Virus record (IMG/VR): IMGVR_UViG_3300005965_000002
Coordinates: 124,001-188,000 of that record
Reading direction: 5' to 3' (one strand)
DNA: 64,000 nt
Shown one piece after another: positions 1,062 through 26,643 of the stretch. Position 1 is the stretch's first letter. Every line of letters begins with the position of its first letter. Made by a program: the position numbers and the translations under genes. The notes below the pieces were generated by a model, which was given only the letters and a program-made list of their open reading frames with translations, did not search any database and was not told where the DNA came from.

Positions 1062-3032
1062 TTGGATATTGATAAATTTTTTGGCGATATATATATTGTT
1101 AATATGAATAAACTAGATGAAATCAGAGAGAAAATTAAGAATGGCTCTTCCTATGAGGAACTATCCAAGGAGTATCCTTTAACGATAAATGGATACAAGA
1201 AACTGGGAGGAGTAATAAAAAAGAAGAGAAAAGTAAATAGCCATTCGGTAGCTGCTGTATACGGGAAAAAGTTAAAGGACGGATTAAATACTATAGATAT
1301 AATAGTTCAAGATGAACAAAAAGGTAGAGAAAAGAAATTAAACAGATCTCATATTATAGGAACATTACTAGGAGACGCATCTATAATAGTCACCACAAAT
1401 AAATGCTACCGTAGAACTTTTTACTACACAGTGGCACATACATGGAGACAGATAGAATACACTAAACTTAACTATGAAAAATTAAAGCCATACGTATCCA
1501 GGGTTAATATATCGGAGCCTAGAGATTGTGACGGTTTTAAAGATCACTGTATTTATATAAATACGGAAAGTACATCTGATTTTTTAGAATATTACGATAT
1601 GTTTTATACCCATGGAAAAAGAGATTGTAATCCTAAGAAACATGTTTTTCGCAGCAATATAGCTACAGAAATAGATGTAGAAGTACTATCGTTTTGGTTA
1701 ATGGATGACGGTAATCAGAGGGGAAAAGCAAAAGGTGTATTTGAGTTGACCATAGGAATGCAGGATTTTTATACAGAGAGAGAAGTAAAATGCTTTGTTG
1801 ATATTCTAACAGATAAAATAGGTATACCTTTCTATTACAACTTTGGTTCTACTTCTATCGAGATATATAATAAAATAGAATCATCAGAAAAGGCTATTCA
1901 GTTATTATCTCCGTATATTATCCCTGACTTAAGTTACAAATTGGGTTTAGAACCTGACATGTGCGGTTCTGTTTATAGAGGTGAGATTTGGTATAAAAAC
2001 TGGCAAAAAAGTAGGATAAATATACAGCACCCCTTTTTAGAAGATAATGACATAGAAGACTACAGAAGATCTAAAGATCCAAAGTTTAAGGAAATGTTTA
2101 GAAGAGCTCTTTTATACCGTACGAAAGTAAGAGGGTTTCCACACGCATCTTATTCTAATTCAGAATTACTTGATCTATGGAATAATTTAAAAGAGAGTTC
2201 TTACGAGTGTGTTGAGGCGTATTTAAAACCTAATTACAATTTAAATAGATTTCCCAGTTATTTTTTCCCTAATAGATTCCGGTGTATTAAGAAAGGTCAT
2301 AAATCTGCTGTAGAGGTATTTAACAATAATAAGGATTTATCAAAGGTAATAGATAGACAGCTAAAATCAAAGGACAATATAAACAACAGTAATATAAGGA
2401 ACGCTATAGGTGGATACGGTGCTCCAGTACCCGCTCAGTTTAACCCGGCTTATGCTAGGTACTTCATTGCTAAATATAGTAATGAAGGGGACTTGATATT
2501 AGACCCTTCTGCAGGATGGGGTAGTAGACTAGCTTCATCTATTTCTTTAAATAGAAGTTATTACGGTATAGAGCCCAATAGTGAAACCGTAACAAACTTA
2601 AATAAAGAGATTTCTTGGTTTAAGAATAACAACATAGATGTTAATGCTACTATAGTAAAGGGTTGTTCAGAGGATATAGAATCTTATAGGGGTATTAAAT
2701 TCGATATGGCAATTACTAGTCCTCCGTTTTTTGACAAGGAGGTTTATAGTTATGAGGATACACAATCGATAAGAAGATACTCAGATTTTGAAGAGTGGTG
2801 TGAGAAATTCTTAAAGGTAATGATTTTAAATACATTTAATTCTTTGAAAAAAGGAAAATTTTTTGTACTAAATGTAGCTAATTATTCTGACTGTCATTTA
2901 GCATATATTTCTAAGTACTTGTTAAAAGATGTGGGGTATTCTATAAAGGATATAGTCTATACAAAACCTGTTTCTAGACCAGTTTCCGGTAAATCGTTAA
3001 AAGAGGAATTTATAGTAGCGGAGAAAATATGA
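1062..3032 (+). CDS. LAGLIDADG endonuclease - amino-DNA methyltransferase fusion
   Basis: IIGTLLGDAS and LSFWLMDDGN (LAGLIDADG_2-type motifs); C-terminal LDPSAGWGSRL (SAM motif I) and ITSPPFF (motif IV); TTG start, alternative ATG slightly downstream. Confidence 0.85.
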   Translation: MDIDKFFGDIYIVNMNKLDEIREKIKNGSSYEELSKEYPLTINGYKKLGGVIKKKRKVNSHSVAAVYGKKLKDGLNTIDIIVQDEQKGREKKLNRSHIIGTLLGDASIIVTTNKCYRRTFYYTVAHTWRQIEYTKLNYEKLKPYVSRVNISEPRDCDGFKDHCIYINTESTSDFLEYYDMFYTHGKRDCNPKKHVFRSNIATEIDVEVLSFWLMDDGNQRGKAKGVFELTIGMQDFYTEREVKCFVDILTDKIGIPFYYNFGSTSIEIYNKIESSEKAIQLLSPYIIPDLSYKLGLEPDMCGSVYRGEIWYKNWQKSRINIQHPFLEDNDIEDYRRSKDPKFKEMFRRALLYRTKVRGFPHASYSNSELLDLWNNLKESSYECVEAYLKPNYNLNRFPSYFFPNRFRCIKKGHKSAVEVFNNNKDLSKVIDRQLKSKDNINNSNIRNAIGGYGAPVPAQFNPAYARYFIAKYSNEGDLILDPSAGWGSRLASSISLNRSYYGIEPNSETVTNLNKEISWFKNNNIDVNATIVKGCSEDIESYRGIKFDMAITSPPFFDKEVYSYEDTQSIRRYSDFEEWCEKFLKVMILNTFNSLKKGKFFVLNVANYSDCHLAYISKYLLKDVGYSIKDIVYTKPVSRPVSGKSLKEEFIVAEKI

Positions 3033-3960: not shown

Positions 3961-6000
3961 ATGCATAAGATATCAGATGATACTATAAAAGAGCTAATAA
4001 TCGATAGGAAAATGACAGATCACCAGGCAGCTAAGTATTTAGGTGTAAGCCGCATGACCGTATCTAGGAGAAGAAATAAAATAGGTATAGATCAGAAGCC
4101 TAAGCGTCCTGATGGTTACTATGAATTAACAGCGGAGCAGGAAAAAGAGTTAGAAAGGCACTACAACGAAGGTAGGAACGATTACGAAGTTTCAGAGTTA
4201 ACGTGTTTAGGCAGGAACAGATTACGTGAGTGGAGAAAAAAAAGAGGAATACTCTCTAAGTCTAATAAAAAAGGCTTAGGCAAAGAGGATGCTGAGAAAG
4301 CGATACTAATGAGAAATAGTGGTAGCACATATGAACAGATAGCTGCTGAGTTTGGTGTTAAAAGAACATCAATATCAAAACTACTTAAAAGAAGCGGGTA
4401 TAAAGAAGATAATATGTATAGGCCCACCAGCCCTAAATGGGCTGAATCCTATACTCTTACCAATGACCAGAGGTCTGTCATAATTGGAGATCTTTTAGGA
4501 GATGGTACTTTAGTATCTACTTCAGAAGAAAACGCATACTATCAGTCAGGCCACTCGAATTATCAAGAATTTTTTATAAGATGGAAATATAGTGTGTTAT
4601 CTCCGCTGACTTCGAGTGTGGGTAGTAAAAAAGATTATAGCGCTTACTCTGTAAAGACTTGGACATGCCGAGAACTAGGAGCATTAAAAAAAGTTTTTTA
4701 TCCCGAAGGTAATAAAGTTATTAATAAAGAGATCGCAGACACCATTAATGAGATCACGCTAGCAGTTTGGTATATGGGAGATGGGTCGTTAATTAGGAAA
4801 TCCCCTTATATACATATAGGCAAACAAGTGGATGCAAGTGTTTTTAAGGAATCCATTTTAAGGAATTTAAGCATATCTTCCTATGTGAGGGACTACAGTA
4901 AAGAGAGTCACTTAGTATTTGAGTCCGATTCTTTCTTTAAAAAAACGGCTCCATACATATTACCAGAATTTTATAAAAAGGTTCCTGAAAATTACCACAC
5001 TAACTTAGGGAAGTACTGGTCTGATAAGAGTTTGTTTCCTTATGTAACTTCTGATATTTATTTAAGATTACCGGATAAAGATAAGATACAAGTAGTTAAT
5101 GCTTTGTGCGCTTATTATAGAAAAAAAGGTTTTCCTTACCCGAGATGCAATAGAAGGGAGTTGCTCAAGTCTTATAAGTCTTTTTTAGATAAGGATAATG
5201 AGGTAGCAGCATTTAAGATATGTAACCATTTTATGCCTCATAGATATGATTGTCGTAGGTATGATAGCAACCCGATGGAAAATTGGAATAATGATAAACT
5301 TTTTAGAAAGTTTATTATTAACAGACTAACTTATGGAAAAGGTTATATATCAGATTCTGTCATTAGGACAGGTATGCAACTAAAAGGTGTAGTAGCTAAT
5401 TTCAGCCCTATGACTGCCCGTTACATCTATAATAACTATTTACCGGAAGGAGGATCTTCTCTAGATTTTAGTTCTGGTTTTGGTGGCAGGCTGCTTGGGT
5501 TTCTGGCTTCAAAACCCTCCGGTACGTATTTAGGTGTGGAGCCTTTTACAAAGTCTTATATTGGCTTAGAAAAAATGAAGGAATATTTTTTAGACCACAA
5601 CAAATCTAAGTCCGTAGATATAGTAAAATCTCCTTTTGAAGACTTATGTGGTAAACTTAGTGGTGGCTCGTTTGACATGGTATTTTCTTCTCCTCCTTAT
5701 TATGGCTTAGAGATTTATAGTGAAGACTCTACACAGAGTTTTATCCGTTACCCTAAATATGAAGATTGGCTAAATAACTTTTGGTATTTGGTTTTAGATG
5801 AAAGTATAAGGGTGCTGAAGAGGTCAGGTCATCTTATTTTTTCGATAGGAAACTATAAAAATTATGATCTAATACACGACACTAAATATTATTTAAGGCA
5901 GAAGAGCGTAGAAGAGAAAGGTTCCATTAATATTCATTATAAAAACGTATACCTTAATTCTAAGAAGAAAGAAGATGTATTCGTGTATAAAAAACTTTAA
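3961..6000 (+). CDS. HTH - LAGLIDADG endonuclease - amino-DNA methyltransferase fusion (second paralog)
   Basis: N-terminal HTH repeats (AAKYLGVSRMTVSRRR; IAAEFGVKRTSISKLL); IIGDLLGDGT and LAVWYMGDGS; LDFSSGFGGRLLG and VFSSPPYY. Confidence 0.85.
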   Translation: MHKISDDTIKELIIDRKMTDHQAAKYLGVSRMTVSRRRNKIGIDQKPKRPDGYYELTAEQEKELERHYNEGRNDYEVSELTCLGRNRLREWRKKRGILSKSNKKGLGKEDAEKAILMRNSGSTYEQIAAEFGVKRTSISKLLKRSGYKEDNMYRPTSPKWAESYTLTNDQRSVIIGDLLGDGTLVSTSEENAYYQSGHSNYQEFFIRWKYSVLSPLTSSVGSKKDYSAYSVKTWTCRELGALKKVFYPEGNKVINKEIADTINEITLAVWYMGDGSLIRKSPYIHIGKQVDASVFKESILRNLSISSYVRDYSKESHLVFESDSFFKKTAPYILPEFYKKVPENYHTNLGKYWSDKSLFPYVTSDIYLRLPDKDKIQVVNALCAYYRKKGFPYPRCNRRELLKSYKSFLDKDNEVAAFKICNHFMPHRYDCRRYDSNPMENWNNDKLFRKFIINRLTYGKGYISDSVIRTGMQLKGVVANFSPMTARYIYNNYLPEGGSSLDFSSGFGGRLLGFLASKPSGTYLGVEPFTKSYIGLEKMKEYFLDHNKSKSVDIVKSPFEDLCGKLSGGSFDMVFSSPPYYGLEIYSEDSTQSFIRYPKYEDWLNNFWYLVLDESIRVLKRSGHLIFSIGNYKNYDLIHDTKYYLRQKSVEEKGSINIHYKNVYLNSKKKEDVFVYKKL

Positions 6001-6080
6001 AAAGTGCGTACAAAACAGTATATTAGATTAACTTGATATTATTATCTCATATCAAAAACAAACAACATGAGGAGGCCCTA

Positions 6081-6278
6081 ATGGCTATTGCGGTAAAGAA
6101 GCCGCTGTCGAAGACAGCTCGAATCAAGCTTGTGCGTGCTGCTAAAAAGCAGGCAGGTAGAATGAAGCGTCCGGACATGATTAAGATGGTTCGGGACATG
6201 GACACCCGTGTTACCACAGCTGAAGCCGGTAAGATTGTAACCGAAGCTAACCAGGCAACAAAGGCTAAGAAGAAGTAA
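6081..6278 (+). CDS. Small basic K/R/A-rich protein, possible DNA-binding core protein
   Basis: ATG at 6081 after gaggagg RBS; 65 aa, ends KAKKK; followed by terminator. Confidence 0.6.
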   Translation: MAIAVKKPLSKTARIKLVRAAKKQAGRMKRPDMIKMVRDMDTRVTTAEAGKIVTEANQATKAKKK

Positions 6279-6306
6279 GTATATACTTACATACATTTGA
6301 GATATT

Positions 6307-6337
6307 AAAGGCGAGGGCTTAGGCTCTCGCCTTTTTT
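6307..6337 (+). terminator. Rho-independent terminator
   Basis: aaaggcgagggc-ttag-gctctcgccttt followed by T tract. Confidence 0.85.
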
Positions 6338-6344
6338 ATTTCAC

Positions 6345-6358
6345 ATAATCTTTTAATA
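6345..6358 (+). promoter_or_regulatory. Putative late promoter motif copy 1
   Basis: ATAATCTTTTAATA, 44 nt before the next start. Confidence 0.6.
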
Positions 6359-6402
6359 CAAAAGCTCTTATGTAGGACTAAAGATATTTTAGAGAGATTT
6401 GT

Positions 6403-7080
6403 ATGAAAAAGACCATAACTTCTAATATTCTAGTATTTGCCTTTACGATATTAGAGAAGAATGCTCCTATAGAGATTGAAAACAAGTACGGGATAAAGGT
6501 AGATGAATCCGTAGAAGGTAAGTTTGCTGTTTTAATTCTCAAGGCTCTCGATAGGCTTCCTTTAGAGTTAACTAAAGCTTGTGGTATAGTTTCATTAGGA
6601 ATAAAGGATTTAGGTCCTTCTAAGGAATATTATCCCAACCATGGAGTCTACGTATCTAATACTCTTTACCTAAATAAATGGAATACCGAAGATCCCTGGG
6701 TAGTTGAGGATTCATCGGGTAATAGGTTAGATAGGTTCGACCACACCTTATACCATGAGATGGGTCATGGCTTAGACGAAGTACTGGGAGGTGAAAAAGA
6801 CCTTTCACTTCAGCCAGAATGGTTAGATTTGTCTGGGTGGAGCCCAGAGCCTAAAGATGGTTTAAAAAGAGTGATTATTCGTGAAGCAGGATCCCCTGAG
6901 TTAGTAGGGGAGTGGTGGTACAATCCGGAGGCTGGGTACACTAGATTTTATGCTAAAAGAAATCCTTGGGATGATTGGGCAGATAGTTTTGCTTATTATG
7001 TAGCAGGACTTAAAAGTTATCTTCCTGAATCCAAAATCAGTTATTTCAATAAGTTAATAGGCAAATTTTTCAAGGAATAG
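6403..7080 (+). CDS. Zincin-type (HExxH) metallopeptidase-like protein
   Basis: TLYHEMGHGLDE plus downstream YAKRNPWDDWADSFAYY, matching the Y-x3-N-x2-E-x-F-A-E pattern of lethal-factor/Zmp1-like zincins but with Asp substitutions. Confidence 0.7.
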   Translation: MKKTITSNILVFAFTILEKNAPIEIENKYGIKVDESVEGKFAVLILKALDRLPLELTKACGIVSLGIKDLGPSKEYYPNHGVYVSNTLYLNKWNTEDPWVVEDSSGNRLDRFDHTLYHEMGHGLDEVLGGEKDLSLQPEWLDLSGWSPEPKDGLKRVIIREAGSPELVGEWWYNPEAGYTRFYAKRNPWDDWADSFAYYVAGLKSYLPESKISYFNKLIGKFFKE

Positions 7081-7082
7081 AT

Positions 7083-7880
7083 ATGAAGGAAGTAAGAAAT
7101 TATTTAGATAAATTAGCCGTGAAGCTAGCCAGCCATGGGTTTGAGGATTTTGCTTTTGATGTGTGGGATGCGGGTACCTCGATAATGAGGTACGCTTCTT
7201 CTAACCAGGTAGAGGAAGCTGAAAAAAGATATTACGAAACAAAAAAAGTAGATGATTTAGTAGAGTATCATAACTCGGGGCAAATGGATAGAGACATCGC
7301 AACTATGATAAAGGGCGGGAAGTCTTATAAAGAGATAGCAGAGAGAAAATTCAAGCAGATCCAACAGGATAACCCGCCGTATGCGCACGATCAAGGAGCT
7401 AAACAGTTAGCAGAAAGTTTAATGCGCGGTGTTCAGAGGGGTGCCATAAGAGCAGCTTCTTTGATTATGTCTAGAATGGCATGTTATCTAAAGGACCTGG
7501 GTTATGATAATGAGGCTCAGATACTGCATAGCTCCTTTTCTAAGGTAGCATCTAAGGGCCGTAACGTAGGTGATAAAGTAGAAAATTTTCAAGTAATTTC
7601 TCTTGAAGAAATGTATGAAAATTCTACTCACAAAGCTGAGCAGAAACCAATATTAGAAAATATCCAAATAATGGTTAAAACATATGAATCTGTACTAAAG
7701 CTTATTAAGAAATTTAAGAAAGATTACGAGAAGCTTATAAAGGTTTACTTGAAACAAACAGGTGAAGAAGTAGACAAAAAAGAATTAGAAGAATATTCAA
7801 CTAAAATGGTAGAGTTAATCACATACTATGACACTGCAATCAGTAATGAATTCAGGTCTCTCGCAAAGGCTATGGTATAG
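7083..7880 (+). CDS. Hypothetical head-associated protein
   Basis: 265-aa ORF with two copies of an amphipathic helix motif and RYAS/RAAS/KVAS sites. Confidence 0.6.
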   Translation: MKEVRNYLDKLAVKLASHGFEDFAFDVWDAGTSIMRYASSNQVEEAEKRYYETKKVDDLVEYHNSGQMDRDIATMIKGGKSYKEIAERKFKQIQQDNPPYAHDQGAKQLAESLMRGVQRGAIRAASLIMSRMACYLKDLGYDNEAQILHSSFSKVASKGRNVGDKVENFQVISLEEMYENSTHKAEQKPILENIQIMVKTYESVLKLIKKFKKDYEKLIKVYLKQTGEEVDKKELEEYSTKMVELITYYDTAISNEFRSLAKAMV

Positions 7881-7911
7881 CCTGATCAAGAGCATTTTAA
7901 GGAGCCCCGTT

Positions 7912-8175
7912 ATGAAAGCTCAATTTTTGAGTGAGGCTAGCGGTAAAACTAGTTTTATGAGAGTGATTACCACTTTTATCGTGATTACTATTATGGGAGT
8001 GTTTTTGGCTCAGAATATTATGTCTATGATAAACGGTGGTGGGTTAGTTTCTTTGGGGGTGTCTGAAGCTTCATTGTTAGCCGGTCTCTTAGGTATGAAA
8101 GCTGCCCAAAGGTTTGGTGAACATAAATCAAGTTCTGTGCAGTCATTGCCCGATAATGAGATGCCTAAGTCGTGA
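7912..8175 (+). CDS. Small two-TM membrane protein (holin-like)
   Basis: ATG at 7912 after aaggag; GKTSFMRV followed by two hydrophobic helices and a charged tail. Confidence 0.55.
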   Translation: MKAQFLSEASGKTSFMRVITTFIVITIMGVFLAQNIMSMINGGGLVSLGVSEASLLAGLLGMKAAQRFGEHKSSSVQSLPDNEMPKS

Positions 8176-8444
8176 AAAAATCAGATATTCTACCATCTTT
8201 GGAGTACTATATGCCAAACCCAAAGGATTATGATAATAAGCAAGATTGGATGGATGCCTGTATGTCCCAACAAAAGGACGAAGGCAAAAATATGAAGAAA
8301 GAAGATGAGAGGGATCAGGCAGTAGCCATTTGTCTAAATATGTGGAGAGATAAGAATAAGAAGACTGCCAGTAAGGGCAAGGTAGCGAGCGCCGCCAAAG
8401 CTTTATATAAATTATCAAAGAAATTAGAAGATCTTGGAAAGTAA
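8172..8444 (+). CDS. Small phage head-associated protein
   Basis: PNPKDY...WMDACM...DQAVAICLNMW pattern typical of small phage head-region proteins; KTAS/KVAS sites. Confidence 0.55.
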   Translation: MKKSDILPSLEYYMPNPKDYDNKQDWMDACMSQQKDEGKNMKKEDERDQAVAICLNMWRDKNKKTASKGKVASAAKALYKLSKKLEDLGK

Positions 8445-8445
8445 A

Positions 8446-9669
8446 ATGAAATATCTCATATCCGATTCCCTGAGACGTATTGCATCCGCTTTAGAAGTTG
8501 ATCTAGATAATGTTAAGAATAGCAAAAAGCCGGTTGTTTTCTTAGGTGGAAATGCTTCTGATAATTCCTGGAGAGAAGATATAAAAAAGGAATTTTCCGA
8601 TAAGATTATGTTTTTGGATCCCTTTGATAAAGATTGGGAAGCAGAAGAAAACATATATAAGGAATTAGAAGCATTGATGAAATCGGACAACGTCGTTTTC
8701 TATAAGGGCGGAGAAGGATCTGAAAAAGAAAAAGAATTTCTTGATCAGGTCAAAAAAAGTAATTACGAAGATTTTGACGACTTGAGCGAGCTAAAGAATT
8801 ATCTAAAAAAGATAAGCGGTAAAATGGAAAAAACTGCTTATCCTATAGTAGGTCAACCCGCTTCTGACCTTAAGTTGGAGAAGCTCGATAAAGAATCCAT
8901 CGAGGCTTTAATAGAGGATTTAAAACAGGGTGTGGATATTAAGGTAGACCCAGAAGTAAAAAAGATTCCCAATATGTCCGATTTGCATGAGTTGAAAGCT
9001 GAAGACATAAAAAAAGAGATAGCTAAAGGTAATCCTTTTTTAAAAGTGTTGCTTGATAAGTATAAGAGTTTACCCGGGAGTAAAAACCCAGCGCTCAAAT
9101 ATGATAAAGAAAAACATATGTATATACCAACTGAATTGGGGCAAATGAGTAAATCAGCAAAGCAAGGAATGGTATATGACCGGAGTTCTACTCAATATGA
9201 TTTTCCTGAATTAATAGCTGATAAAGTTCTGCGCTGGTCTAAAAAGAATGTCCCGGATATTGCACTAGGAGAAGATGGCAGAGAAGATGAGATTCATGTT
9301 ACTATTCTTTATGGGTTGTTTACTACAAATCCTTCCGAAGTAGAAGATATTATAAAAAAGTATAACATAGAACCTTTTGAGATAAGACTATCCTTAATTA
9401 CTGCTTTTTTAAATGGTGACCAGGATGTTTTGAAGATAGATGTAGAATCCTCTGGACTCCACAACCTCCATAAGCTACTCCAAGAAAATATCAAGAATGA
9501 TAACAAATATCCGGAGTACCGACCCCACGTAACTATAGCCTACCTTAAAAAAGGCGAATCAGAAAATTACATAGGTAGAGATGATTTTCAGGGAATATCG
9601 TGCAAGGTGAATAATATTGTTTTTAGCTCCAGAACGGGCGATAAAATAGACATTCCTCTTATTGGTTGA
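8446..9669 (+). CDS. Nucleoside 2-deoxyribosyltransferase-like domain + Acb1/T4 gp57B-like 2H phosphodiesterase
   Basis: N-terminal VVFLGG...SWRE...FLDPF...DW...E; C-terminal two HxT motifs EIHVTILYG and YPEYRPHVTIAY; ATG at 8446 preferred over TTG at 8434. Confidence 0.75.
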   Translation: MKYLISDSLRRIASALEVDLDNVKNSKKPVVFLGGNASDNSWREDIKKEFSDKIMFLDPFDKDWEAEENIYKELEALMKSDNVVFYKGGEGSEKEKEFLDQVKKSNYEDFDDLSELKNYLKKISGKMEKTAYPIVGQPASDLKLEKLDKESIEALIEDLKQGVDIKVDPEVKKIPNMSDLHELKAEDIKKEIAKGNPFLKVLLDKYKSLPGSKNPALKYDKEKHMYIPTELGQMSKSAKQGMVYDRSSTQYDFPELIADKVLRWSKKNVPDIALGEDGREDEIHVTILYGLFTTNPSEVEDIIKKYNIEPFEIRLSLITAFLNGDQDVLKIDVESSGLHNLHKLLQENIKNDNKYPEYRPHVTIAYLKKGESENYIGRDDFQGISCKVNNIVFSSRTGDKIDIPLIG

Positions 9670-9671
9670 TA

Positions 9672-9685
9672 ATATTCTATTAATA
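9672..9685 (+). promoter_or_regulatory. Putative late promoter motif copy 2
   Basis: ATATTCTATTAATA upstream of 9747. Confidence 0.6.
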
Positions 9686-9746
9686 ATACACATAAGTAGA
9701 TTCTATAAGATCTCAGACTATATTCATATCCAGAAAGGAGTATGAG

Positions 9747-10853
9747 ATGGCAGAACGTAACTATGTCGCTCTCGTTGATTTCAATGTCAACATCGACAAC
9801 GGTAAGGAGACAGTAAAAATAACGGCTGGCTCTGAGTTTTCATACGACGGGTTGTATGTTACTTTTGGTGATTCCAGAGGAATGTGCAAACCTCTAGGTA
9901 AGATGGCTGGAGAATGGTTTTCAGTATCCAATAATCAGCCAGCACAGACTAAGCCTGCAGCGCCTAACCCCAATACCACTAAATCTAGAGTAGAGAATAG
10001 TGATGAAGTACCGAACGCTCCTGTAGTGAATGCGGGGAAAGATCGAGAACTAGAAGGCATGGTGGATAACTATGAAAAGGGTACTTACAAAAATCCTTCA
10101 GCAAAAGTTATCCACGATGATGAGGCTGTAGTCGGCCAGGTAAAGAATACCGACCAGAACGCAGTAAAAAATACGACAGGTGTTCAGATGAATGAGCAAC
10201 CGGATAGCGAAAAAAGGGTTGTTTATGAGGAAGAAAGGGTTGCTAAGGAAACCGTCCCCCAGAAGCCTGATGAGGGTGAAAAGCACCTGAAGGTAGAAGG
10301 CGAAGGAGATGGCGTTTTAGTTAAGGAAACCAGTCCTCTGTCTGAAGTAGAAAAGCTTAGGAAGCAGTTAGCAGAAGCTGAGGCTCGTCTTGCCGAATCA
10401 CAGAAACCCCAGGTTTCTGTCGAAGAGGATGCAGTTAAAAAGACTTCTGCTCTGAATAACCAATCTACTGATATTGGTTCTTCCACTCAGGCTCAAACTA
10501 TAGAAAAGCCAGCAACTCCAAAGGGGAAACTTTCCGGAAAAAAGACTGGAACTTTGAAGAGAGCGACAAACTCAGGTAGACCTGTAGTGATAGAAGAGCA
10601 AGAGGGTACTGTAGTTGGTAAGGTAAAAAATACCAACGTTAATCAGACAAAGGATGGTATTACCATCCGTACCCGTGTGAAGAATATGGATGATGTGGAG
10701 GAGGCGGCGGTTACCTATGGTAACTCTGTACCGGATGAACCCTCTGTAGAAATAACCGGGTCTGAACCATCAGCAGTTGACGCCTCTGATGTCGGTGTGC
10801 CTGTTCAAAAGGATGCTGATATCGACGTAGAGGATTTACTTAGCGAAATATAA
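9747..10853 (+). CDS. Hypothetical acidic, largely low-complexity protein
   Basis: 368-aa ORF with good RBS (aaggag); recurring acidic-V-V/K motifs (DDEAVVGQV, EEQEGTVVGKV). Confidence 0.65.
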   Translation: MAERNYVALVDFNVNIDNGKETVKITAGSEFSYDGLYVTFGDSRGMCKPLGKMAGEWFSVSNNQPAQTKPAAPNPNTTKSRVENSDEVPNAPVVNAGKDRELEGMVDNYEKGTYKNPSAKVIHDDEAVVGQVKNTDQNAVKNTTGVQMNEQPDSEKRVVYEEERVAKETVPQKPDEGEKHLKVEGEGDGVLVKETSPLSEVEKLRKQLAEAEARLAESQKPQVSVEEDAVKKTSALNNQSTDIGSSTQAQTIEKPATPKGKLSGKKTGTLKRATNSGRPVVIEEQEGTVVGKVKNTNVNQTKDGITIRTRVKNMDDVEEAAVTYGNSVPDEPSVEITGSEPSAVDASDVGVPVQKDADIDVEDLLSEI

Positions 10854-10864
10854 GGTAGGTTCAA

Positions 10865-12625
10865 GTGGCGGCAAGGGTTTGGAAAGTAGTGGCTGATTAT
10901 TTAGACGGCCCAAACTATAGCGTTTTCTTTCAAGAACCTGCCTGGATGGACTATATGAAGCAGAAGGCTGAGAAGCCTAAAGGAAAAGCTCCTGAGTCCA
11001 TTAAGAAGATGATCAAAGAAAAAGGTCTTTCCGAACCCTTCCCCGCCTATAATCCTTATGATTATCAGTCTCCTACTGATAAGCCAAAGGATTTAAAAGA
11101 CGGGCCTCCTTTTCAAAACGAATTTCCCAATTATCCTATTAATCCTCCCCACGCTGAATTTAACAGAGGTAAAGTATTCAGCCCAGGTGGAGTAATGGAT
11201 TATAAGTATAAGACACGTAACCAAGATTGGACACAGGATCCGAGCGAGCAGTATCCTGCCATCAGTATAGACCGTAAGTATGCTTCTGATGAGCAGGTAA
11301 AGAGGGTGGTAGCTGGGTACTTACTCCAGCATATGCCTCTGGTGCTCAATCCAGAAGATTTCGATGATTTTGGAGCGTATATAAAGACAGCCGCAAGCTT
11401 AAATGAGATCATATCAAAGGATTTTCACTATAAAAATGATGAAAAGATTAATAGAGCAGAACAGTGCTCTGTAAAACGCTTGAATCGACCAAGTGAGATA
11501 GAGCAAGGAATGATACGCTACCATGTAAATTGTACTGGGTCCCCGGATACACATACAGTTGTTTTTCAGTTTATGAGGGATAAAACAGGGAGACGTCCTG
11601 ACACATATGCAGATTACCCTGTACAGATAGCGTGTAGCTGTGAATCTTTTCTTTTTTATGGGGCTCAGTATTATGCCGTGCAGGGTGAGTACATGTATAT
11701 GCCGAGATTTAGAAGATCCTTGGTTCCTCCCACTCCACACGAACAGATTTCTAGCACGGAAGGCAACAGACTGAATCCTGGTAGAGGTTTGAATTTTAGG
11801 GTGTGTAAACATATTCTTGCTTGCTATAACCAAATAAAAGGAATGAGGATTACAAAATACTATAGAAATTACCCGGAAATTGGGGCTCCTTCGAAGATAA
11901 TGAATAAGGAGCAGTGGAAAAAATTACTTAAGTTTGAATTTACTAAAGAAAACATTGTAAAAAGATTGACCTCATCAAAGCCAAAAATACCAGCATACTA
12001 TTCTAGTAAAAACATTAAACCTGAGTTAAATAAGTGGTTTAGAGAAGTATATGTTCCTAGAACAGAAGATGAAAAGATAAAGATTCTTGAAACGTTAGTG
12101 GAGCATCCTGAAGAAATTTTCTTTCTTGCAATAAAGGATGCGTACTTCCGACAGGGTAATCTTTCGAAGAGATATGTTGATAAGGTATATGATCTACTGT
12201 CAAAAGTTATAATGCCAGAAAGTGACCAAGAGCCCAGACAAGAGAAAATGGAAGGGGTGCCTGAGGAACAACAAGAGGTAGGCAAAGGCACTGGTATGGT
12301 CATTCCAGATGTAGAGAATATCCTGTCCGAGCGTGTAGAAGGTGAATTCGATGAAAGCATGATAAAAGATATTGAGACAGAGATAGAAAATATTAACCCG
12401 GAACTAAAGGGTGATAAGAAGGAACAAGCTATAGAAACCATAAAGTCTCAATTGATTGATGGCTTAGCCAAAGAAATAGAAGATGAGCTTAAGAAGCCTT
12501 ATGCTACCACGCCACAGGAAAAAATAGATAACAAATTAAAAAAGATAACACCTACATCTATAAGGAGAAAAATATGGAAGTCTATACAGCAGAATGGTCT
12601 GCAGCAGATATTAGGGGAGCTATAA
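10865..12625 (+). CDS. SWIM-type zinc-finger domain protein
   Basis: IACSCESF...VCKHILAC (CxC...CxH); KYAS and KTAA sites before the domain. Confidence 0.7.
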   Translation: MAARVWKVVADYLDGPNYSVFFQEPAWMDYMKQKAEKPKGKAPESIKKMIKEKGLSEPFPAYNPYDYQSPTDKPKDLKDGPPFQNEFPNYPINPPHAEFNRGKVFSPGGVMDYKYKTRNQDWTQDPSEQYPAISIDRKYASDEQVKRVVAGYLLQHMPLVLNPEDFDDFGAYIKTAASLNEIISKDFHYKNDEKINRAEQCSVKRLNRPSEIEQGMIRYHVNCTGSPDTHTVVFQFMRDKTGRRPDTYADYPVQIACSCESFLFYGAQYYAVQGEYMYMPRFRRSLVPPTPHEQISSTEGNRLNPGRGLNFRVCKHILACYNQIKGMRITKYYRNYPEIGAPSKIMNKEQWKKLLKFEFTKENIVKRLTSSKPKIPAYYSSKNIKPELNKWFREVYVPRTEDEKIKILETLVEHPEEIFFLAIKDAYFRQGNLSKRYVDKVYDLLSKVIMPESDQEPRQEKMEGVPEEQQEVGKGTGMVIPDVENILSERVEGEFDESMIKDIETEIENINPELKGDKKEQAIETIKSQLIDGLAKEIEDELKKPYATTPQEKIDNKLKKITPTSIRRKIWKSIQQNGLQQILGEL

Positions 12626-12861
12626 ATTTAGGATTCCATTATTTAGAAAACATGGACTGTATTGTGGGTCATGTGTTTACGCCTCCCATATTAATGAAAA
12701 ATATCATTATAGAGTGCTCCGAGGATGTAGTGTTTGACTTCATACCCGAAGGCATCGGCTTAATTAGAACAGCCTATTTAAAGTATAAGTTTGGGAAGAA
12801 TAATAAAATTGTTTTTGTCGATCAGCATAAGACAAAAGAGGTGGTCATTACTTTAAAATAA
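12574..12861 (+). CDS. Hypothetical protein
   Basis: 95-aa ORF filling the gap; start uncertain because of a 52-nt overlap. Confidence 0.45.
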   Translation: MEVYTAEWSAADIRGAINLGFHYLENMDCIVGHVFTPPILMKNIIIECSEDVVFDFIPEGIGLIRTAYLKYKFGKNNKIVFVDQHKTKEVVITLK

Positions 12862-12905
12862 AGATCAATATAGATATATTATACCAGACAATATAAGGAG
12901 ATAAC

Positions 12906-13367
12906 ATGCCTACCTATGAATACCGCTGCAGTGAATGTGGGACAATAAAGGAAATTGTCCACTCAATCAAGGAATCCCCAAAGTTTTTTTGTGAGTCATG
13001 CGATCCTGAAAATAAAAAAGACCCCTTAGAGCGTCTGATTTCCCAAAACATAGCCGGGGGCTTTTGCTTTAAAGGGATGGGTACGGAGAGCATGATTTGG
13101 AAAGAGAAGCGTATAAGGAATAAGAAAAACGCTGATCTTGAGATGCGCCAGTTGGAGCGTTGGGGAGGTTCCACCCCTAAGCTTACCCCAAATGTTGGTG
13201 GTGAGGTCTATGATAGCTGGGACGATGCCGGTAAAGCTGCGAAATCCAAGGGTTTAGATGACTCAAAGTATAAGCAGCAAGCTGAGGCCAGTAAGAGTAT
13301 CAGCAAAGTATCAGGTATTGATGACAGTAAGTGGAAGGCTGTGAAAGAGAAAAAGAATTCCGTATGA
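12906..13367 (+). CDS. FmdB-family zinc-ribbon protein
   Basis: MPTYEYRCSECG...FFCESC...LERLIS signature; RBS aaggag. Confidence 0.8.
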   Translation: MPTYEYRCSECGTIKEIVHSIKESPKFFCESCDPENKKDPLERLISQNIAGGFCFKGMGTESMIWKEKRIRNKKNADLEMRQLERWGGSTPKLTPNVGGEVYDSWDDAGKAAKSKGLDDSKYKQQAEASKSISKVSGIDDSKWKAVKEKKNSV

Positions 13368-13632: not shown

Positions 13633-16600
13633 ATGGAAAATGCCCTTAAAAAAGGATTAAGCTTAAGTCTTATTGTGGGCCCCGGTGAATCCTCTGAGCT
13701 GGAGAGATGTTTAAAGTCCTGTATTGGATCATTAAACGGGAAAAAGGATCTTTTTGATGAGATAAACATCACATTTGCTACAAAAAAAGAAGACGATAAA
13801 GTCTGGGAGGTAGCAAAAAAGTATGGTACTAAAGTTACGAGATTCGATTGGATAAATGATTTTTCTGCTGCAAGAAATTTCAACTTCAACCAATCAGAGA
13901 TGTCTCATATCTTCTGGGTAGATGCCGATGACGTTATAAAGCCCGAGCAGTACGATAAGTTACTGGAAAGAAAAGAACGTATCTATCAGTTAGATATGAT
14001 TTTAATTTCCTACGTATACGCGCACGACAACGAAGATAAACCTGTCATAGTTCTACCCCGCGAACGAATAGTCAGAAATTGCCCTCAGATAAGGTGGGAG
14101 GATCCGATACACGAGTACCTTCCCATGCTAGCAAACTTTAAAATGCAGGAATGGAAAGATTTAGCGCTTGACCACTATCGGATGAAACCATTTAATCCGG
14201 AGCGAAATGTTTCCATACTAGCGGAACAGTACAAGAAGCCTACCTGTACACCTCGGAATAAGTTTTACTATGGAAAAGAATTATTTGATATACAGCAGTA
14301 CGATAAAGCTCTTCCTATTCTTGAAGAATATGTAAACGAAGGAAAAGATTTCCGAGATAATCTAACGGTTGCTTGCATAAAACTAGCAACGTACTATTAC
14401 GTAAATAATGATAAGCCCTCTGCAAAGGATTTTGCTCTAAGGGGTATGCGGTTTAATAGTGAGTATGCAGAGAACTACGTAATAGTAGGAGATGTGTTAG
14501 CTGAATCAGGATTGTTTGATGAGGCTATCCAATATTATTCAGAAGCATCCGGCAAGAAGCTAACCGGGGGTATGTCTCAGCTAGTAGATTATTACGGGTT
14601 TATTCCGAATTATCGTTTAGCCGTGATGTACGCCAATAAGCGGGATTATAAGAAGTCCAAGGAATATGCCTTACAGGCATTGGAAATAAAACCTAATAAT
14701 CCTGAATTAAAAAATTTGGTAAACCAATTGGACACCAACATCTCTGAGAGCGAAAAAGAGAAGGTAATGGATGAGAACTTTGTAAATGAGTTGCAAAAGT
14801 TCTTGTCTGACCATAATTTTTCCTTAGCTGTTGAAGAAAACAATTCTTTCTTTGGAAGAATAAAACTTTCTGTAAAAAAGAATGTTTCTATAGCCTGGAT
14901 GTTGCCTGGTATAAATCCAGAAGATCCTGCCACCCGTATACGTCGGTTGAATATAAATAAATATTTTAACGATAACTCTGTCGGTGTCAAAACATGTATA
15001 GTAACCAATTATCTCACACTGTCTCCTTATGAGATAAGAAACAAGATAGGCGAGAGCACCGTAGCTGTTTTTACGACCTATACCTCGAAGGATAAGGAAG
15101 CAATAGATTATCTGAAAAATATAGGAGTACGAGTAATCTATGATATCGCTGAAGCCATCTTTGATATGCCGGGTGTTGCAGAATGCCTGAAATTAGCGGA
15201 TGGTATAGTATGCTGTTCCGAGAAGCTTGCAGAAATGTGTATGGAAAGAGGCCTGCGGAATGTAATGGTTATTAAGGATGCCATAGAAAAGTGGGCTCCA
15301 GTAAAAGAACACAAAGAAATAGAAAAACCAAAAGCTCTCTATATGGGTATGGGCGGTAACAGCTTTCTTGTTACAGAATTCTTAAAAGACACAATTACTG
15401 AAGCTGGTTATGATTTAGAAGTAATTACTGAATGGGATGACGCTACTAAGAAATGGTCATTGGAAACCTGGGCGGAAGATATGGTAGCGTGCGATGTTGT
15501 GTTATGCCCCCAAAGAGTTGACGTGCAGCCTGCGAAGTCGGACGTTAAGGCCTCAGTAGCAATGGCATTGGGAATGCCCGTTATAGCCAGCAGCCTGCCT
15601 TCTTATAGAACTATAATCAAAAATGGTGAAAACGGATACATATGCGAGACTAAGGACGATTGGAAAGAAGCTCTGATTAAATGCAAGGATTATAAACATA
15701 GAGCAGAAATCGGAAAGAAAGCTAGAGAATCTATAAAGGATCATAGCATAGAAAAAGTAACTGAGCAATGGAAGCAGGCTAGCCTGGAAACTCTTGAGAG
15801 TGAACAGACAAGCGTTCAGATCCAGCAGTCAACTCCAGATAAAAGAAGAGACATTGTAGACATAATCATTCCTAATTATCAGAATGTAGACTATTTGAAG
15901 ATGTGTCTCACATCGATAAGGATGAATACACTTTATCCTTATCATATCATCATTTCGGATGCAGGTAGCAATAAAGATACATGGGAGTACCTTAAGTCAT
16001 TAAAGGGAATTACGATCCTCGGCGAGGAGGGTGTTAGAAAAACATATTCCGAAACATGCAACACCGGGATAGAAGCGTCTTCTTCTAAGTTCTTTGTGAT
16101 TATTAATTCTGATATTATCGTGTCCAAGGGTTGGATTACAAATATGATGGACAAGATGACGTCAGTTGATCGATTAGCTGCCTGCGGAGTCCTATCTAAT
16201 TGTGATAGAGGGTGGCTGCACAATGTCCCTGGCAGAGATGACATACCGCAGTACCCTATGCGTTTAGAAAAAGCAGGAATAGATCTGGTTCCCGGCATGA
16301 AGAAAGATCAAATAGCTCCTCATATAGAAGAGCTGTACGCTTTTATGGATGCCTCTAACAAGAGATACAAAGGAAAATTTACCCCTCAGAAATGGGTAGC
16401 TGGTTACGCTACGGTATATGCACGCAGTGCTATTAATGAGGTCGGTCTCTTTGATCCTAGATATAAAAATGGGTGCGAAGATTCAGACCTTTGCTATCGT
16501 TTAGAGAAGTGTGGCTATGCCATGGGTCAGGCTATTGATGCTTTTGTTTTCCATTTCGGGGGCGTAAGCAGGGGTGCTTATCAAGATGAGGGGCGGGAGC

Positions 16601-22002: not shown

Positions 22003-26643
<4,641 letters not shown>

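What the first reader, a model, noticed from the sequence alone, without database searches (positions are those of the whole stretch)
8446..9669. NDT-like domain fused to an Acb1-like phosphodiesterase, possibly virion-delivered dual anti-signalling protein
Seen: the C-terminal domain has both HxT motifs in a context resembling T4 Acb1/gp57B (EIHVTILYG; VLKIDVESSGL; YPEYRPHVTIAY). The N-terminal domain looks like a nucleoside 2-deoxyribosyltransferase-like Rossmann fold, and KTAY and KSAK sites lie between the domains. Known: Acb1 hydrolyses CBASS cyclic oligonucleotides; NDT folds cleave N-glycosidic bonds. Inference: a late-expressed, packaged polyprotein releasing two enzymes against nucleotide immune signals, the second perhaps acting on ADPR-type or modified-nucleotide signals.
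Basis: partly seen in the sequence, partly recalled or inferred. Interest (0 to 1): 0.72.

Follow-up and report, generated by a model that had tools for sequence, protein, structure and literature searches.

The report
NDT-like plus Acb1-related phosphoesterase, huge phage
A huge uncultured phage encodes, among its late structural genes, a protein joining a trimmed nucleoside-deoxyribosyltransferase-like domain to a 2H phosphoesterase related to the anti-CBASS enzyme Acb1; related phages carry the same pair inside giant 'polyvalent' proteins, so it is probably a counter-defence or nucleic-acid-healing enzyme, but its substrate is unknown.

Summary
Window 8446-9669 (+) is one 407-aa ORF. It has an N-terminal NDT/DNPH1/YtoQ-fold domain (residues ~14-125), a ~100-residue middle part, and a C-terminal 2H phosphoesterase with both H-x-T motifs (H284, H361).

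About 35 metagenomic huge-phage proteins share this layout at 36-79% identity and in conserved gene order. The 2H domain groups with Acb1 and with the 2H domains of phage polyvalent proteins, not with LigT/ThpR (hhalign probability 95.8% and 99.9% against 13.6%). It lacks Acb1's C-terminal lid and adenine-contacting Glu, so I call it a relative, not a member.

The N-terminal module is rare: 115 cluster representatives among 1.84 billion. It was single-copy in each of the six viral records searched. It usually sits next to this 2H type, including inside 800-2000-aa proteins that carry ART-PolyVal domains and lie in the structural gene block of phages with a homologous capsid protein. In other phages it is fused to an ATP-dependent ligase or to LigD PrimPol plus 3'-phosphoesterase.

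Late-region placement is supported. Virion delivery is only inferred by analogy. Cleavage at KTAY or KSAK has no support. Anti-signal phosphodiesterase is the leading reading (~0.4); nucleic-acid end healing is a serious rival (~0.3).

The parts
8446..9669 (+). Whole ORF, 407 aa: NDT-like domain, middle part, 2H phosphoesterase
8485..8820 (+). N-terminal NDT/DNPH1/YtoQ-fold module (residues 14-125). Invariant residues include G34-G35, W42-R43, D58-P59, E73 (8662-8664) and E95 (8728-8730)
8830..8844 (+). KTAYP linker motif (residues 129-133; family consensus K-x-[AS]-hydrophobic-P), in a low-confidence linker
   Evidence: also follows the module in P0058
8857..9144 (+). Middle part (residues 138-233) with the conserved DL-x-[FL]-E-x-[LI]-D motif. 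A short stretch of it recurs at the N-terminus of a LigD-PE protein in locus L010
   Evidence: no family match
9151..9177 (+). KSAKQGMVY (residues 236-244): conserved K-x-A-K-x-G-x-x-Y element just before the first strand of the 2H domain
9178..9666 (+). 2H phosphoesterase domain (residues 245-407). H-x-T motif 1 is at 9295-9303 (H284-V-T286) and motif 2 at 9526-9534 (H361-V-T363)
8211..8444 (+). Upstream 77-aa ORF (MPNPKDY... module, two Cys, Lys-rich tail), translationally coupled to the target. The same module is fused N-terminally to NDT-2H or cupin-2H proteins in other phages
6403..7080 (+). Conserved syntenic 225-aa protein with an HExxH motif (YHEMGHG); putative zinc peptidase, first gene after the terminator
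   Evidence: not matched by PF18818
6307..6334 (+). Strong terminator-like hairpin (12 bp stem, 7 GC pairs, T-run) that precedes the tightly packed gene cluster 6403-12625
7083..8175 (+). Two syntenic genes of unknown function: a 265-aa protein (7083-7880) and a small protein with two hydrophobic, predicted membrane-spanning stretches (within 7828-8175)
9747..12625 (+). Two downstream syntenic genes of unknown function: a 368-aa acidic protein and a 586-aa protein with a weak SWIM-like C-x-C...C-x-H pattern

Best explanation
The gene encodes a free-standing copy of a conserved two-domain phage cassette: a trimmed NDT/DNPH1/YtoQ-fold module followed by a 2H phosphoesterase of the clade that holds T4 Acb1 and the 2H domains of phage polyvalent proteins. 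It is probably co-transcribed with six neighbouring genes in the late/structural region of a huge phage.

Shown: the domain anatomy; intact catalytic H-x-T pairs; family relationships; conserved gene order; occurrence of the same cassette inside ART-PolyVal polyvalent proteins of phages with a homologous capsid protein.

Inferred: the 2H domain uses its two His to open a cyclic or 2'/3'-linked phosphodiester in a nucleotide-derived molecule, most likely a host immune cyclic oligonucleotide, as Acb1 does. The NDT-like module either binds the nucleotide moiety or, through invariant E95 and E73, cleaves an N-glycosidic bond in the same substrate or its product.

Inferred more weakly: the protein acts early in infection, possibly carried in the virion like polyvalent proteins. 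Nothing indicates that it must be cut into two enzymes.
For: Anatomy and conservation.

2H affinity. The only PHROG hit is phrog_755 (47 bits), and T4 Acb1 scores 228 bits on the same family. In the PDB profile search Acb1 entries score 3.8e-5, 8.5e-4 and 1.4e-3, archaeal 2'-5' ligase-like proteins 6e-3 and 9e-3, and E. coli LigT is not listed even at E 10. hhalign of the target 2H family gives 95.8% (E 8e-9) against Acb1, 99.9% (E 6e-33) against polyvalent-type 2H, and 13.6% against ThpR. Acb1's base-stacking W74 aligns with invariant F321, F107 with Y/F355, and Y110 with invariant Y358.

Cassette. The N-module profile finds only 115 cluster representatives in 1.84 billion. Of 32 multi-domain ones, 17 also carry this 2H type, and four carry ART-PolyVal with the N-module and the 2H domain close together in the chain (P0184, P0190, P0192, P0186).

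Context. Those polyvalent genes lie 6-7 genes downstream of a homologue of this window's capsid protein (30% identity, E 1e-40), and before a sheath gene in L014. In the window the target lies between the capsid gene (94-975), the tail fibre gene (22003-26643) and the sheath gene (47522-50485), all on the + strand.

Literature. Iyer et al. 2017 (PMC5512222) predicted that polyvalent and solo phage 2H domains degrade defence nucleotides. Hobbs et al. 2022 (PMC9117128) showed this for Acb1.
Against: The Acb1 C-terminal lid (residues 145-152, W147) and the adenine contact E141 have no counterpart: the protein ends ...IPLIG, and the residue before P404 is hydrophobic in all 26 homologues. Equivalence to Acb1 Y12 is unresolved. 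The generic model PF13563, which E. coli's genome (which encodes ThpR/LigT) also matches, outscores the Acb1 model (43.1 against 28.3 bits). Foldseek on the whole model does not separate Acb1 from Usb1, CPDase or LigT. The same N-module is fused in other phages to an ATP-dependent ligase (P0065) and to LigD PrimPol plus 3'-phosphoesterase (P0058). This 2H type is also fused to a cupin whose free-standing version sits between a ligase gene and that PrimPol-PE gene in L009. One relative has a CCA-adding enzyme gene immediately downstream. There is no activity, expression or virion data. The ThpR control alignment was of low diversity (at least 73% identity).
Confidence: 0.4

Rival explanations
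1. Nucleic-acid end healing. The 2H domain converts 2',3'-cyclic phosphate or 3'-phosphate ends, for example on the phage's many tRNAs after host anticodon-nuclease attack, into ligatable ends. The NDT-like module is a nucleotide- or end-recognition or glycosylase-type module that phages attach to repair enzymes.
For: The N-module is 45-50% identical to copies fused to an ATP-dependent DNA ligase (P0065) and to LigD PrimPol plus LigD 3'-phosphoesterase (P0058). In L010 the ligase-module, PrimPol and PE genes sit in a row. A cupin fused to this 2H type (P0053/P0054) appears as a separate gene between a ligase gene and the PrimPol-PE gene in L009. A CCA-adding/HD enzyme gene lies directly downstream in L003. 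The genome fragment carries 37 tRNAs and its own CCA-adding enzyme. One module-bearing protein has weak Tpt1/PARP-like matches, and one member of the 32-protein census matches RNA_ligase (PF09414).
Against: The 2H domain does not resemble ThpR/LigT at profile level (13.6% probability; PF02834 at 21 bits is under its cut-off). No RNA ligase, RtcB, ATP-dependent ligase or LigD-PE was found in the 258-kb fragment, though it is only 55% complete. Iyer et al. 2017 noted that polyvalent and solo phage 2H domains are not linked to RNA ligases. The module was single-copy in all six viral records searched, including a 98%-complete 467-kb one, so it is not a tag shared by several repair enzymes in one phage.
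Confidence: 0.3
2. NAD+/ADP-ribose chemistry. The cassette works alongside ADP-ribosyltransferases. The 2H domain opens ADP-ribose 1'',2''-cyclic phosphate or a cyclic ADPR-type signal. The NDT-like domain cleaves an N-glycosidic bond in NAD+, an ADPR-derived signal, or an ADP-ribose-base adduct on DNA.
For: The cassette occurs together with ART-PolyVal domains in four polyvalent proteins, and with weak Tpt1/PARP-like matches in P0179. An ART-PolyVal gene lies two genes upstream of P0068. NDT/DNPH1-fold enzymes cleave N-glycosidic bonds, and 2H CPDases hydrolyse Appr>p in tRNA splicing (established knowledge, recalled).
Against: Polyvalent proteins combine unrelated activities by design, so co-occurrence need not mean a shared pathway. 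No ART-PolyVal was found in this genome fragment. No macro, NADAR or Nudix partner was seen. All substrate ideas are inference.
Confidence: 0.15
3. The N-terminal module is not an enzyme. It is a ligand-binding, oligomerisation or capsid-targeting module, and only the 2H domain is catalytic.
For: The fold is trimmed: about 100 residues align out of the 117-159 residues of the NDT-superfamily chains matched. PF15891 scores stay below the cut-off in all members scanned. The module is attached to many unrelated partners. NDT enzymes form oligomers with shared active sites (recalled).
Against: Acidic residues E73 and E95 are invariant, at positions that match, by recalled DNPH1 motifs, the general acid and the nucleophile. 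G-G, W-R and D-P are also invariant, which suggests a pocket. Column identity within the module is very high (58%).
Confidence: 0.35

Closest known systems
Acb1 (T4 gp57B; Erwinia phage FBB1, PDB 7T26/7T27; Pfam PF23474, phrog_755)
   Same: 2H fold; both H-x-T motifs; the shared Y-x-P-H-[VI]-T block; an aromatic residue at the W74 and F107 positions; same PHROG; nearest solved structures by sequence profile.
   Different: About 22% identity over ~100 residues. No C-terminal lid or W147 and no E141. A different N-terminal strand element. 407 aa with two extra parts, against a compact ~150-aa enzyme. The Acb1 Pfam score is barely above cut-off.
2H domains of phage polyvalent proteins (Iyer, Burroughs, Anand, de Souza, Aravind 2017, PMC5512222)
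   Same: hhalign probability 99.9% to the 2H domains of ART-PolyVal proteins that also hold the NDT-like module; found in structural gene blocks of phages with a homologous capsid protein.
   Different: Here the cassette stands alone, with no ART or peptidase domain in the chain. The subfamily-specific K-x-A-K-x-G-x-x-Y element replaces the G-C-[LI]-x-x-P-V-P element of the polyvalent versions. The 2017 paper does not contain the word 'deoxyribosyltransferase' (0 occurrences).
NDT / DNPH1 (Rcl) / MilB / YtoQ superfamily (PF05014, PF15891, PF11071)
   Same: Same α/β fold (VIA-align Z 8-10, rmsd 2.4-3.0 Å). Shares the L-[AG]-G...W-R-E-E-I-K and N-I-x-x-E blocks with YtoQ. Acidic residues are conserved where the catalytic pair is expected.
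   Different: Shorter by 30-50 residues. Below the Pfam cut-off. Always seen in viral contexts and mostly fused. No known substrate.
ThpR/LigT RNA 2',3'-cyclic phosphodiesterase (PF02834)
   Same: 2H superfamily; two H-x-T motifs; comparable Foldseek scores.
   Different: Profile-profile probability only 13.6%. PF02834 scores below its cut-off. E. coli LigT is absent from the PDB profile hits at E up to 10.
LigD-type end-repair sets (ligase, PrimPol, 3'-phosphoesterase)
   Same: They share the same NDT-like module, and a short stretch of the middle part, in related huge-phage contigs.
   Different: The target has none of the LigD domains, and none were found in its 258-kb genome fragment.

Membership tests
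Acb1 (PF23474) | 2H fold with two catalytic H-x-[TS] motifs | tested here: met
   H284-V-T286 and H361-V-T363; both His invariant in 26 homologues; 2H fold in the model
Acb1 (PF23474) | Sequence-profile membership (Pfam gathering score; same PHROG as T4 Acb1) | tested here: inconclusive
   PF23474 scores 28.3 against a cut-off of 27 but is outscored by PF13563 at 43.1. phrog_755 scores 47 bits and covers only profile positions 36-126 of 156. hhalign probability is 95.8%
Acb1 (PF23474) | Base-stacking aromatics at the core positions (T4 W74, F107) | tested here: met
   F321 is invariant; position 355 is Y or F in 22 of 26
Acb1 (PF23474) | N-terminal Tyr12 stacking on the nucleobase | tested here: inconclusive
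   The N-terminal alignment has zero confidence. A G-x-x-Y element exists, against G-L-Y in Acb1
Acb1 (PF23474) | C-terminal lid (residues 145-152, W147) and adenine-contacting E141 | tested here: not met
   The protein ends two residues after L405, has no Trp there, and carries a hydrophobic residue at the E141-equivalent position in all 26
Acb1 (PF23474) | Cleaves 3'3'-cGAMP, cA3 and other CBASS signals, and rescues phage from CBASS | not testable with these tools
   Needs biochemistry and plaque assays
ThpR/LigT (PF02834) | Profile similarity to RNA 2',3'-cyclic phosphodiesterases | tested here: not met
   PF02834 scores 21.0 against a cut-off of 23.3. hhalign against 13 ThpR sequences gives probability 13.6%. 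E. coli LigT is absent from the PDB profile hits
NDT/DNPH1/YtoQ superfamily | NDT-type α/β fold | tested here: met
   Foldseek's top hits are NDT, YtoQ and DNPH1. VIA-align gives Z 10.1 (6qai), 9.1 (YtoQ), 8.9 (MilB, DNPH1)
NDT/DNPH1/YtoQ superfamily | Pfam family score above the cut-off | tested here: not met
   PF15891 scores 27.9 against a cut-off of 30. Sub-threshold hits (21-28 bits) recur in 24 of 32 other module-bearing proteins
NDT/DNPH1/YtoQ superfamily | Catalytic Glu nucleophile and acidic general acid in place | tested here: inconclusive
   E95 and E73 are invariant. Their equivalence to DNPH1 E104 and D80 rests on motifs recalled from memory; no residue-level structural alignment was available
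NDT/DNPH1/YtoQ superfamily | N-glycosidase or transglycosylase activity | not testable with these tools
   Needs an enzyme assay
Phage polyvalent proteins (Iyer et al. 2017) | Several unrelated effector-type domains in one phage polypeptide, homologous to domains of recognised polyvalent proteins | tested here: met
   The same NDT-like and 2H domains occur in ART-PolyVal proteins P0184, P0190, P0192 and P0186
Phage polyvalent proteins (Iyer et al. 2017) | Gene located among late or virion structural genes | tested here: met
   Capsid gene 94-975, tail fibre gene 22003-26643, sheath gene 47522-50485, all + strand. The polyvalent homologues sit downstream of a homologous capsid gene
Phage polyvalent proteins (Iyer et al. 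2017) | Associated processing peptidase (MPTase) | tested here: inconclusive
   PF18818 is absent from the genome fragment. A conserved HExxH protein of unknown family lies three genes upstream
Phage polyvalent proteins (Iyer et al. 2017) | Packaged in the virion and delivered with the DNA | not testable with these tools
   No isolate, no proteome

The most novel reading that the evidence does not exclude
The NDT-like module is an active N-glycosidase that works together with an Acb1-type phosphodiesterase. The pair would first open and then de-base a nucleotide immune signal, or strip an ADP-ribose-base adduct. It would be carried in the capsid and released at injection. That would make it a two-step, virion-delivered counter-defence enzyme of a kind not yet described.
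Probability: 0.15. Interest if true: 0.8.

Novelty: new variant of a known kind. Interest (0 to 1): 0.55.

Why it matters
Acb1 is so far a compact single-domain enzyme found mainly in T4-like phages. This finding shows that a sister 2H lineage in huge uncultured phages is almost always paired with a rare, strongly conserved NDT-fold module. The pair is also a building block of ART-bearing polyvalent proteins.

If the module is catalytic, it would add N-glycosidic bond cleavage to the known ways in which phages inactivate nucleotide-based defences. If it is a recognition module, its alternative fusions to ligase, PrimPol, 3'-phosphoesterase and 2H domains point to a common nucleotide or nucleic-acid end that these enzymes handle.

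Either way the protein is small, soluble-looking and has clear catalytic residues, so the question can be tested directly.

Tried and rejected
1. A DNA-level search of 6000-13000 against known phages found no match.
2. Tested: are the window's 368-aa and 586-aa neighbours homologues of the PrimPol and PE genes that flank the ligase-module gene in L010? They are not.
3. Tested: is the HExxH protein homologous to the N-terminus of P0068, or to any gene in the polyvalent loci? It is not. MPTase-PolyVal and ART-PolyVal are absent from the genome fragment.
4. Idea: the N-module is a tag shared by several enzymes within one phage. Rejected, because there is one copy in the own fragment and one in each of five other viral records, including a 98%-complete 467-kb genome.
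5. A search for a repair set in the own fragment found no ATP-dependent ligase, LigD-PE, Rnl1, Rnl2-type ligase or RtcB, only a CCA-adding enzyme. The fragment is 55% complete, so absence is weak evidence.
6. Complex prediction of the target with the upstream 77-aa protein, which is fused to it in other phages, returned 'no answer'. It is not evidence either way.
7. Atlas and PHROG searches of the middle part and of the small upstream ORF gave only noise-level or unnamed viral clusters.
8. Literature searches for PF15891, DUF6496, 'Acb1 plus deoxyribosyltransferase' and YtoQ function found nothing relevant. Burroughs & Aravind 2016 is not held.
9. Searching whole records behind the encoding-contig loci was not possible.
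10. Foldseek on the full-length model cannot discriminate among 2H families.
Full report
**1. The observation**

Window 8446-9669 (+) is a single open frame of 407 codons. Its ATG lies one base after the TAA of the upstream ORF and is preceded by GGAAAG, so 8446 is the likely start rather than the TTG at 8434.

Pfam gives:
- PF13563 (2_5_RNA_ligase2): 43.1 bits, E 5.6e-11
- PF23474 (Acb1): 28.3 bits, cut-off 27
- PF15891 (Nuc_deoxyri_tr2): 27.9 bits, cut-off 30

**2. Genome and surroundings**

The window is part of a 258,580-bp viral record that CheckV rates 55% complete. This is a huge phage, and the fragment carries 37 tRNA genes. No known phage matches it at the DNA level. At the protein level the best matches in the phage collection, for the C-terminal half only, are 480-640-kb uncultured phages.

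Within the window:
- the major capsid gene is at 94-975 (phrog_2522);
- a collagen-like tail fibre gene is at 22003-26643, and a tail sheath gene at 47522-50485;
- nearly all long ORFs are on the + strand.

A strong terminator-like hairpin at 6307-6334 precedes a tight run of + strand genes from 6403 to 12625. No further + strand terminator was found in that run. The run comprises an HExxH protein, a 265-aa protein, a small protein with two hydrophobic stretches, a 77-aa protein starting MPNPKDY, the target, a 368-aa acidic protein and a 586-aa protein. This order is kept in relatives that are only about 40% identical.

**3. A conserved family**

The large protein collection holds 73 relatives. 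About 35 of them align over 90-100% of the query at 36-79% identity, plus one near-identical copy at 95%. An alignment of 26 gives these invariant positions:
- N-terminal part: F32-L-G-G35, W42-R43, D58-P59, E73, F85, E95, F98
- C-terminal part: A238, E280, H284, T286, Y289-G290, F321, K330, S335, Y358, H361, K369 (T363 is T in 25 of 26)

The AlphaFold model (mean pLDDT 83.9) shows three parts. Two low-confidence linkers, at residues 127-131 and 234-242, separate them.

**4. The C-terminal domain**

Foldseek places the domain in the 2H fold but cannot separate Acb1 from Usb1, CPDase or LigT; all score 1e-6 to 1e-5. Sequence profiles do discriminate:
- The only PHROG hit is phrog_755. T4 gp57B (Acb1), fetched from NC_000866, scores 228 bits on that same family.
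- A family profile against all PDB sequences lists Acb1 entries first: 9q2g at 3.8e-5, 7t26 at 8.5e-4 and 9q2y at 1.4e-3. Two archaeal 2'-5' ligase-like proteins follow at 6e-3 and 9e-3. E. coli LigT is not listed at all.
- hhalign of the family against 13 Acb1 sequences gives probability 95.8%, E 8e-9, over 99 columns that span both H-x-T motifs.
- hhalign against 13 ThpR sequences gives 13.6%; against the 2H domains of polyvalent proteins it gives 99.9%.

I also compared the residues that Hobbs et al. 2022 describe for Acb1: Y12, W74, F107, the W147 lid, E141, and H44/H113 (PMC9117128).
- W74 corresponds to invariant F321.
- F107 corresponds to Y or F at 355.
- The Y-x-P-H-x-T block is shared.
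- The chain ends two residues after L405. There is no lid and no Trp, and a hydrophobic residue occupies the E141 position in all 26.

I therefore treat it as a relative of Acb1 that probably works in the same chemical way. It is not a member, and its substrate may differ.

**5. The N-terminal domain**

Four lines of evidence agree:
- sub-threshold PF15891 hits recur across the family;
- a family profile hits YtoQ (8of6) at E 0.004, with shared L-[AG]-G...W-R-E-E-I-K and N-I-x-x-E blocks;
- Foldseek hits for a separate domain model (pLDDT 87) are dominated by NDT, YtoQ, DNPH1 and MilB;
- VIA-align gives Z 8-10 with about 100 aligned residues at 2.4-3.0 Å.

The domain is 30-50 residues shorter than those enzymes. 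Invariant E95 follows the third strand, and invariant E73 lies in the preceding helix. In an ungapped register with DNPH1 motifs as I recall them, these match the nucleophile (E104) and the general acid (D80). That is a lead from memory, not a test.

**6. Where else the module occurs**

This was the most informative step. A profile of the module, scored against 1.84 billion cluster representatives, finds only 115 proteins. They fall into three groups: free-standing proteins of 105-180 aa, proteins of the target type, and larger multi-domain proteins.

A Pfam census of 32 multi-domain ones shows this 2H type in 17 and ART-PolyVal in 4. Per-protein architectures:

| Protein | Length | Layout |
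|---|---|---|
| P0184 | 1978 aa | ART-PolyVal ×4, module, 2H |
| P0190 | 1588 aa | ART, module, 2H |
| P0192 | 1069 aa | ART ×3, module, 2H |
| P0186 | 839 aa | 2H, module, ART |
| P0179 | 769 aa | weak Tpt1/PARP-like, module, 2H |
| P0195 | 919 aa | module, SprT-like, 2H |

These polyvalent genes lie 6-7 genes downstream of a 296-300-aa protein that is 30% identical (E 1e-40) to this window's capsid protein. In L014 they lie upstream of a sheath gene.

So the target looks like a solo version of a cassette that related phages carry inside polyvalent proteins. Iyer et al. 2017 predicted that such proteins are packaged, delivered with the DNA and often processed by an embedded peptidase. They also predicted that the 2H domains degrade defence nucleotides or act as RNases (PMC5512222). 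That paper does not contain the word 'deoxyribosyltransferase' (0 occurrences). I found no paper on this pairing.

**7. The counter-current**

The same module, at 45-50% identity, also appears with repair enzymes:
- at the C-terminus of an ATP-dependent DNA ligase (P0065);
- at the N-terminus of a LigD PrimPol plus LigD 3'-phosphoesterase protein (P0058).

In L010 the genes run ligase-module, PrimPol, PE. The PE protein there begins with a short stretch resembling the target's middle part.

This 2H type is also fused to a cupin (P0053/P0054). A free-standing cupin sits between a ligase gene and the module-PrimPol-PE gene in L009. In L003 a CCA-adding/HD enzyme gene follows the target's orthologue directly.

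These links point to nucleic-acid end processing and keep that rival alive. Three things weigh against it:
- the poor match to ThpR;
- the absence of any ligase in the available fragment;
- the module being single-copy in every viral record searched, including a 98%-complete 467-kb genome. This argues against a shared docking tag within one phage.

**8. The proposed cleavage sites**

Both motifs are conserved, and both lie in flexible linkers.

KTAYP follows the module, and a similar motif (KTADFP) follows it in P0058. K-x-A-K-x-G-x-x-Y directly precedes the first strand of the 2H domain. It also occurs in cupin-2H fusions and in a short homologue (P0055). In the polyvalent versions a different element, G-C-[LI]-x-x-P-V-P, takes its place.

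This pattern fits a structural or substrate-binding role for the 2H N-terminus at least as well as a protease site. A conserved HExxH protein is encoded three genes upstream, but it does not match MPTase-PolyVal. Nothing tested here shows processing.

**9. The upstream small ORF**

The upstream 77-aa protein (8211-8444) is fused to the N-terminus of NDT-2H proteins (P0010, P0049, P0012) and of cupin-2H proteins (P0053) in other phages. It is therefore probably a functional partner. A complex prediction gave no answer.

**10. Verdict**

- The anatomy is confirmed.
- 'Acb1-like' is right as a statement of kinship and probable chemistry. Membership fails on the lid and the adenine contact.
- 'NDT-like' is right at fold level.
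- 'Late' is supported by position.
- 'Virion-delivered' is a reasonable analogy, not a result.
- 'Polyprotein cut at KTAY/KSAK' is unsupported.

My estimates:

| Claim | Probability |
|---|---|
| 2H domain is an active phosphoesterase | 0.9 |
| Physiological substrate is a host immune cyclic oligonucleotide | 0.4 |
| Physiological substrate is RNA or DNA ends | 0.3 |
| Physiological substrate is an ADPR-type molecule | 0.15 |
| N-module is catalytic | 0.5 |
| Protein is packaged in the virion | 0.35 |
| Protein is proteolytically split | 0.1 |

The pairing appears undescribed, so this is a new variant of a known kind and of moderate interest.

Noticed in passing
window 1062-3032 and 3961-6000: Two N6/N4 DNA methyltransferase ORFs each carry a LAGLIDADG_2 endonuclease domain in the same frame; the second also has several HTH domains. 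The arrangement is conserved in relatives L001 and L003.
   Followed up: no
G000:C1:2056-59314 (outside the window); suppressor-type tRNA at 30968-31041 (-): 37 tRNA genes cluster on the minus strand. One has a CTA anticodon (amber-suppressor type; aragorn calls it Pyl). A CCA-adding enzyme gene lies at 17228-17698 (-). ORFs in the window read through normally with code 11.
   Followed up: partly
window 22003-26643: A 1546-aa collagen-like tail fibre ORF with many overlapping repeat matches. It explains the rise in GC to 50-54% at 22-26 kb.
   Followed up: no
window 13633-17787: A 1384-aa protein with several glycosyltransferase domains (GT2, GT1/GT4) and TPR repeats, syntenic in relatives. 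In L005 the homologue shows a faint intein hit.
   Followed up: no
window 8211-8444: Small MPNPKDY... protein with two conserved Cys and a Lys-rich tail. It is found as an N-terminal module on NDT-2H and cupin-2H proteins elsewhere. Only unnamed viral clusters match it.
   Followed up: partly
window 6403-7080: Strongly conserved 225-aa HExxH protein (L-Y-H-E-[ML]-G-H-G, R-N-P-W-D-D). It fits no curated family, with only weak Peptidase_Mx similarity.
   Followed up: partly
window 7828-8175: Small protein with two hydrophobic stretches (predicted membrane-spanning segments), conserved in gene order just upstream of the MPNP ORF. The true start is probably downstream of 7828.
   Followed up: no
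P0012 (relative, 631 aa), residues ~460-631: After the NDT-2H unit there is a second short region with two H-x-T motifs (HVTFAF, HITLST), apparently a tandem second 2H-like domain.
   Followed up: no
L010:2368-4303: A resolvase plus Cas12f1-like TnpB gene pair (transposon-type) sits inside a huge-phage contig, a few kb upstream of the ligase-module gene.
   Followed up: no
L030:1438-2709 (G002): Here the NDT-like module is a free-standing 146-aa protein. A downstream neighbour has a D-F-D-G-T motif typical of HAD phosphatases.
   Followed up: no
L007:5592-6411 (T4): In T4, the gene for Acb1 (57B) lies directly beside ipI, which encodes a head-packaged injected internal protein. This is only an adjacency.
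   Followed up: no
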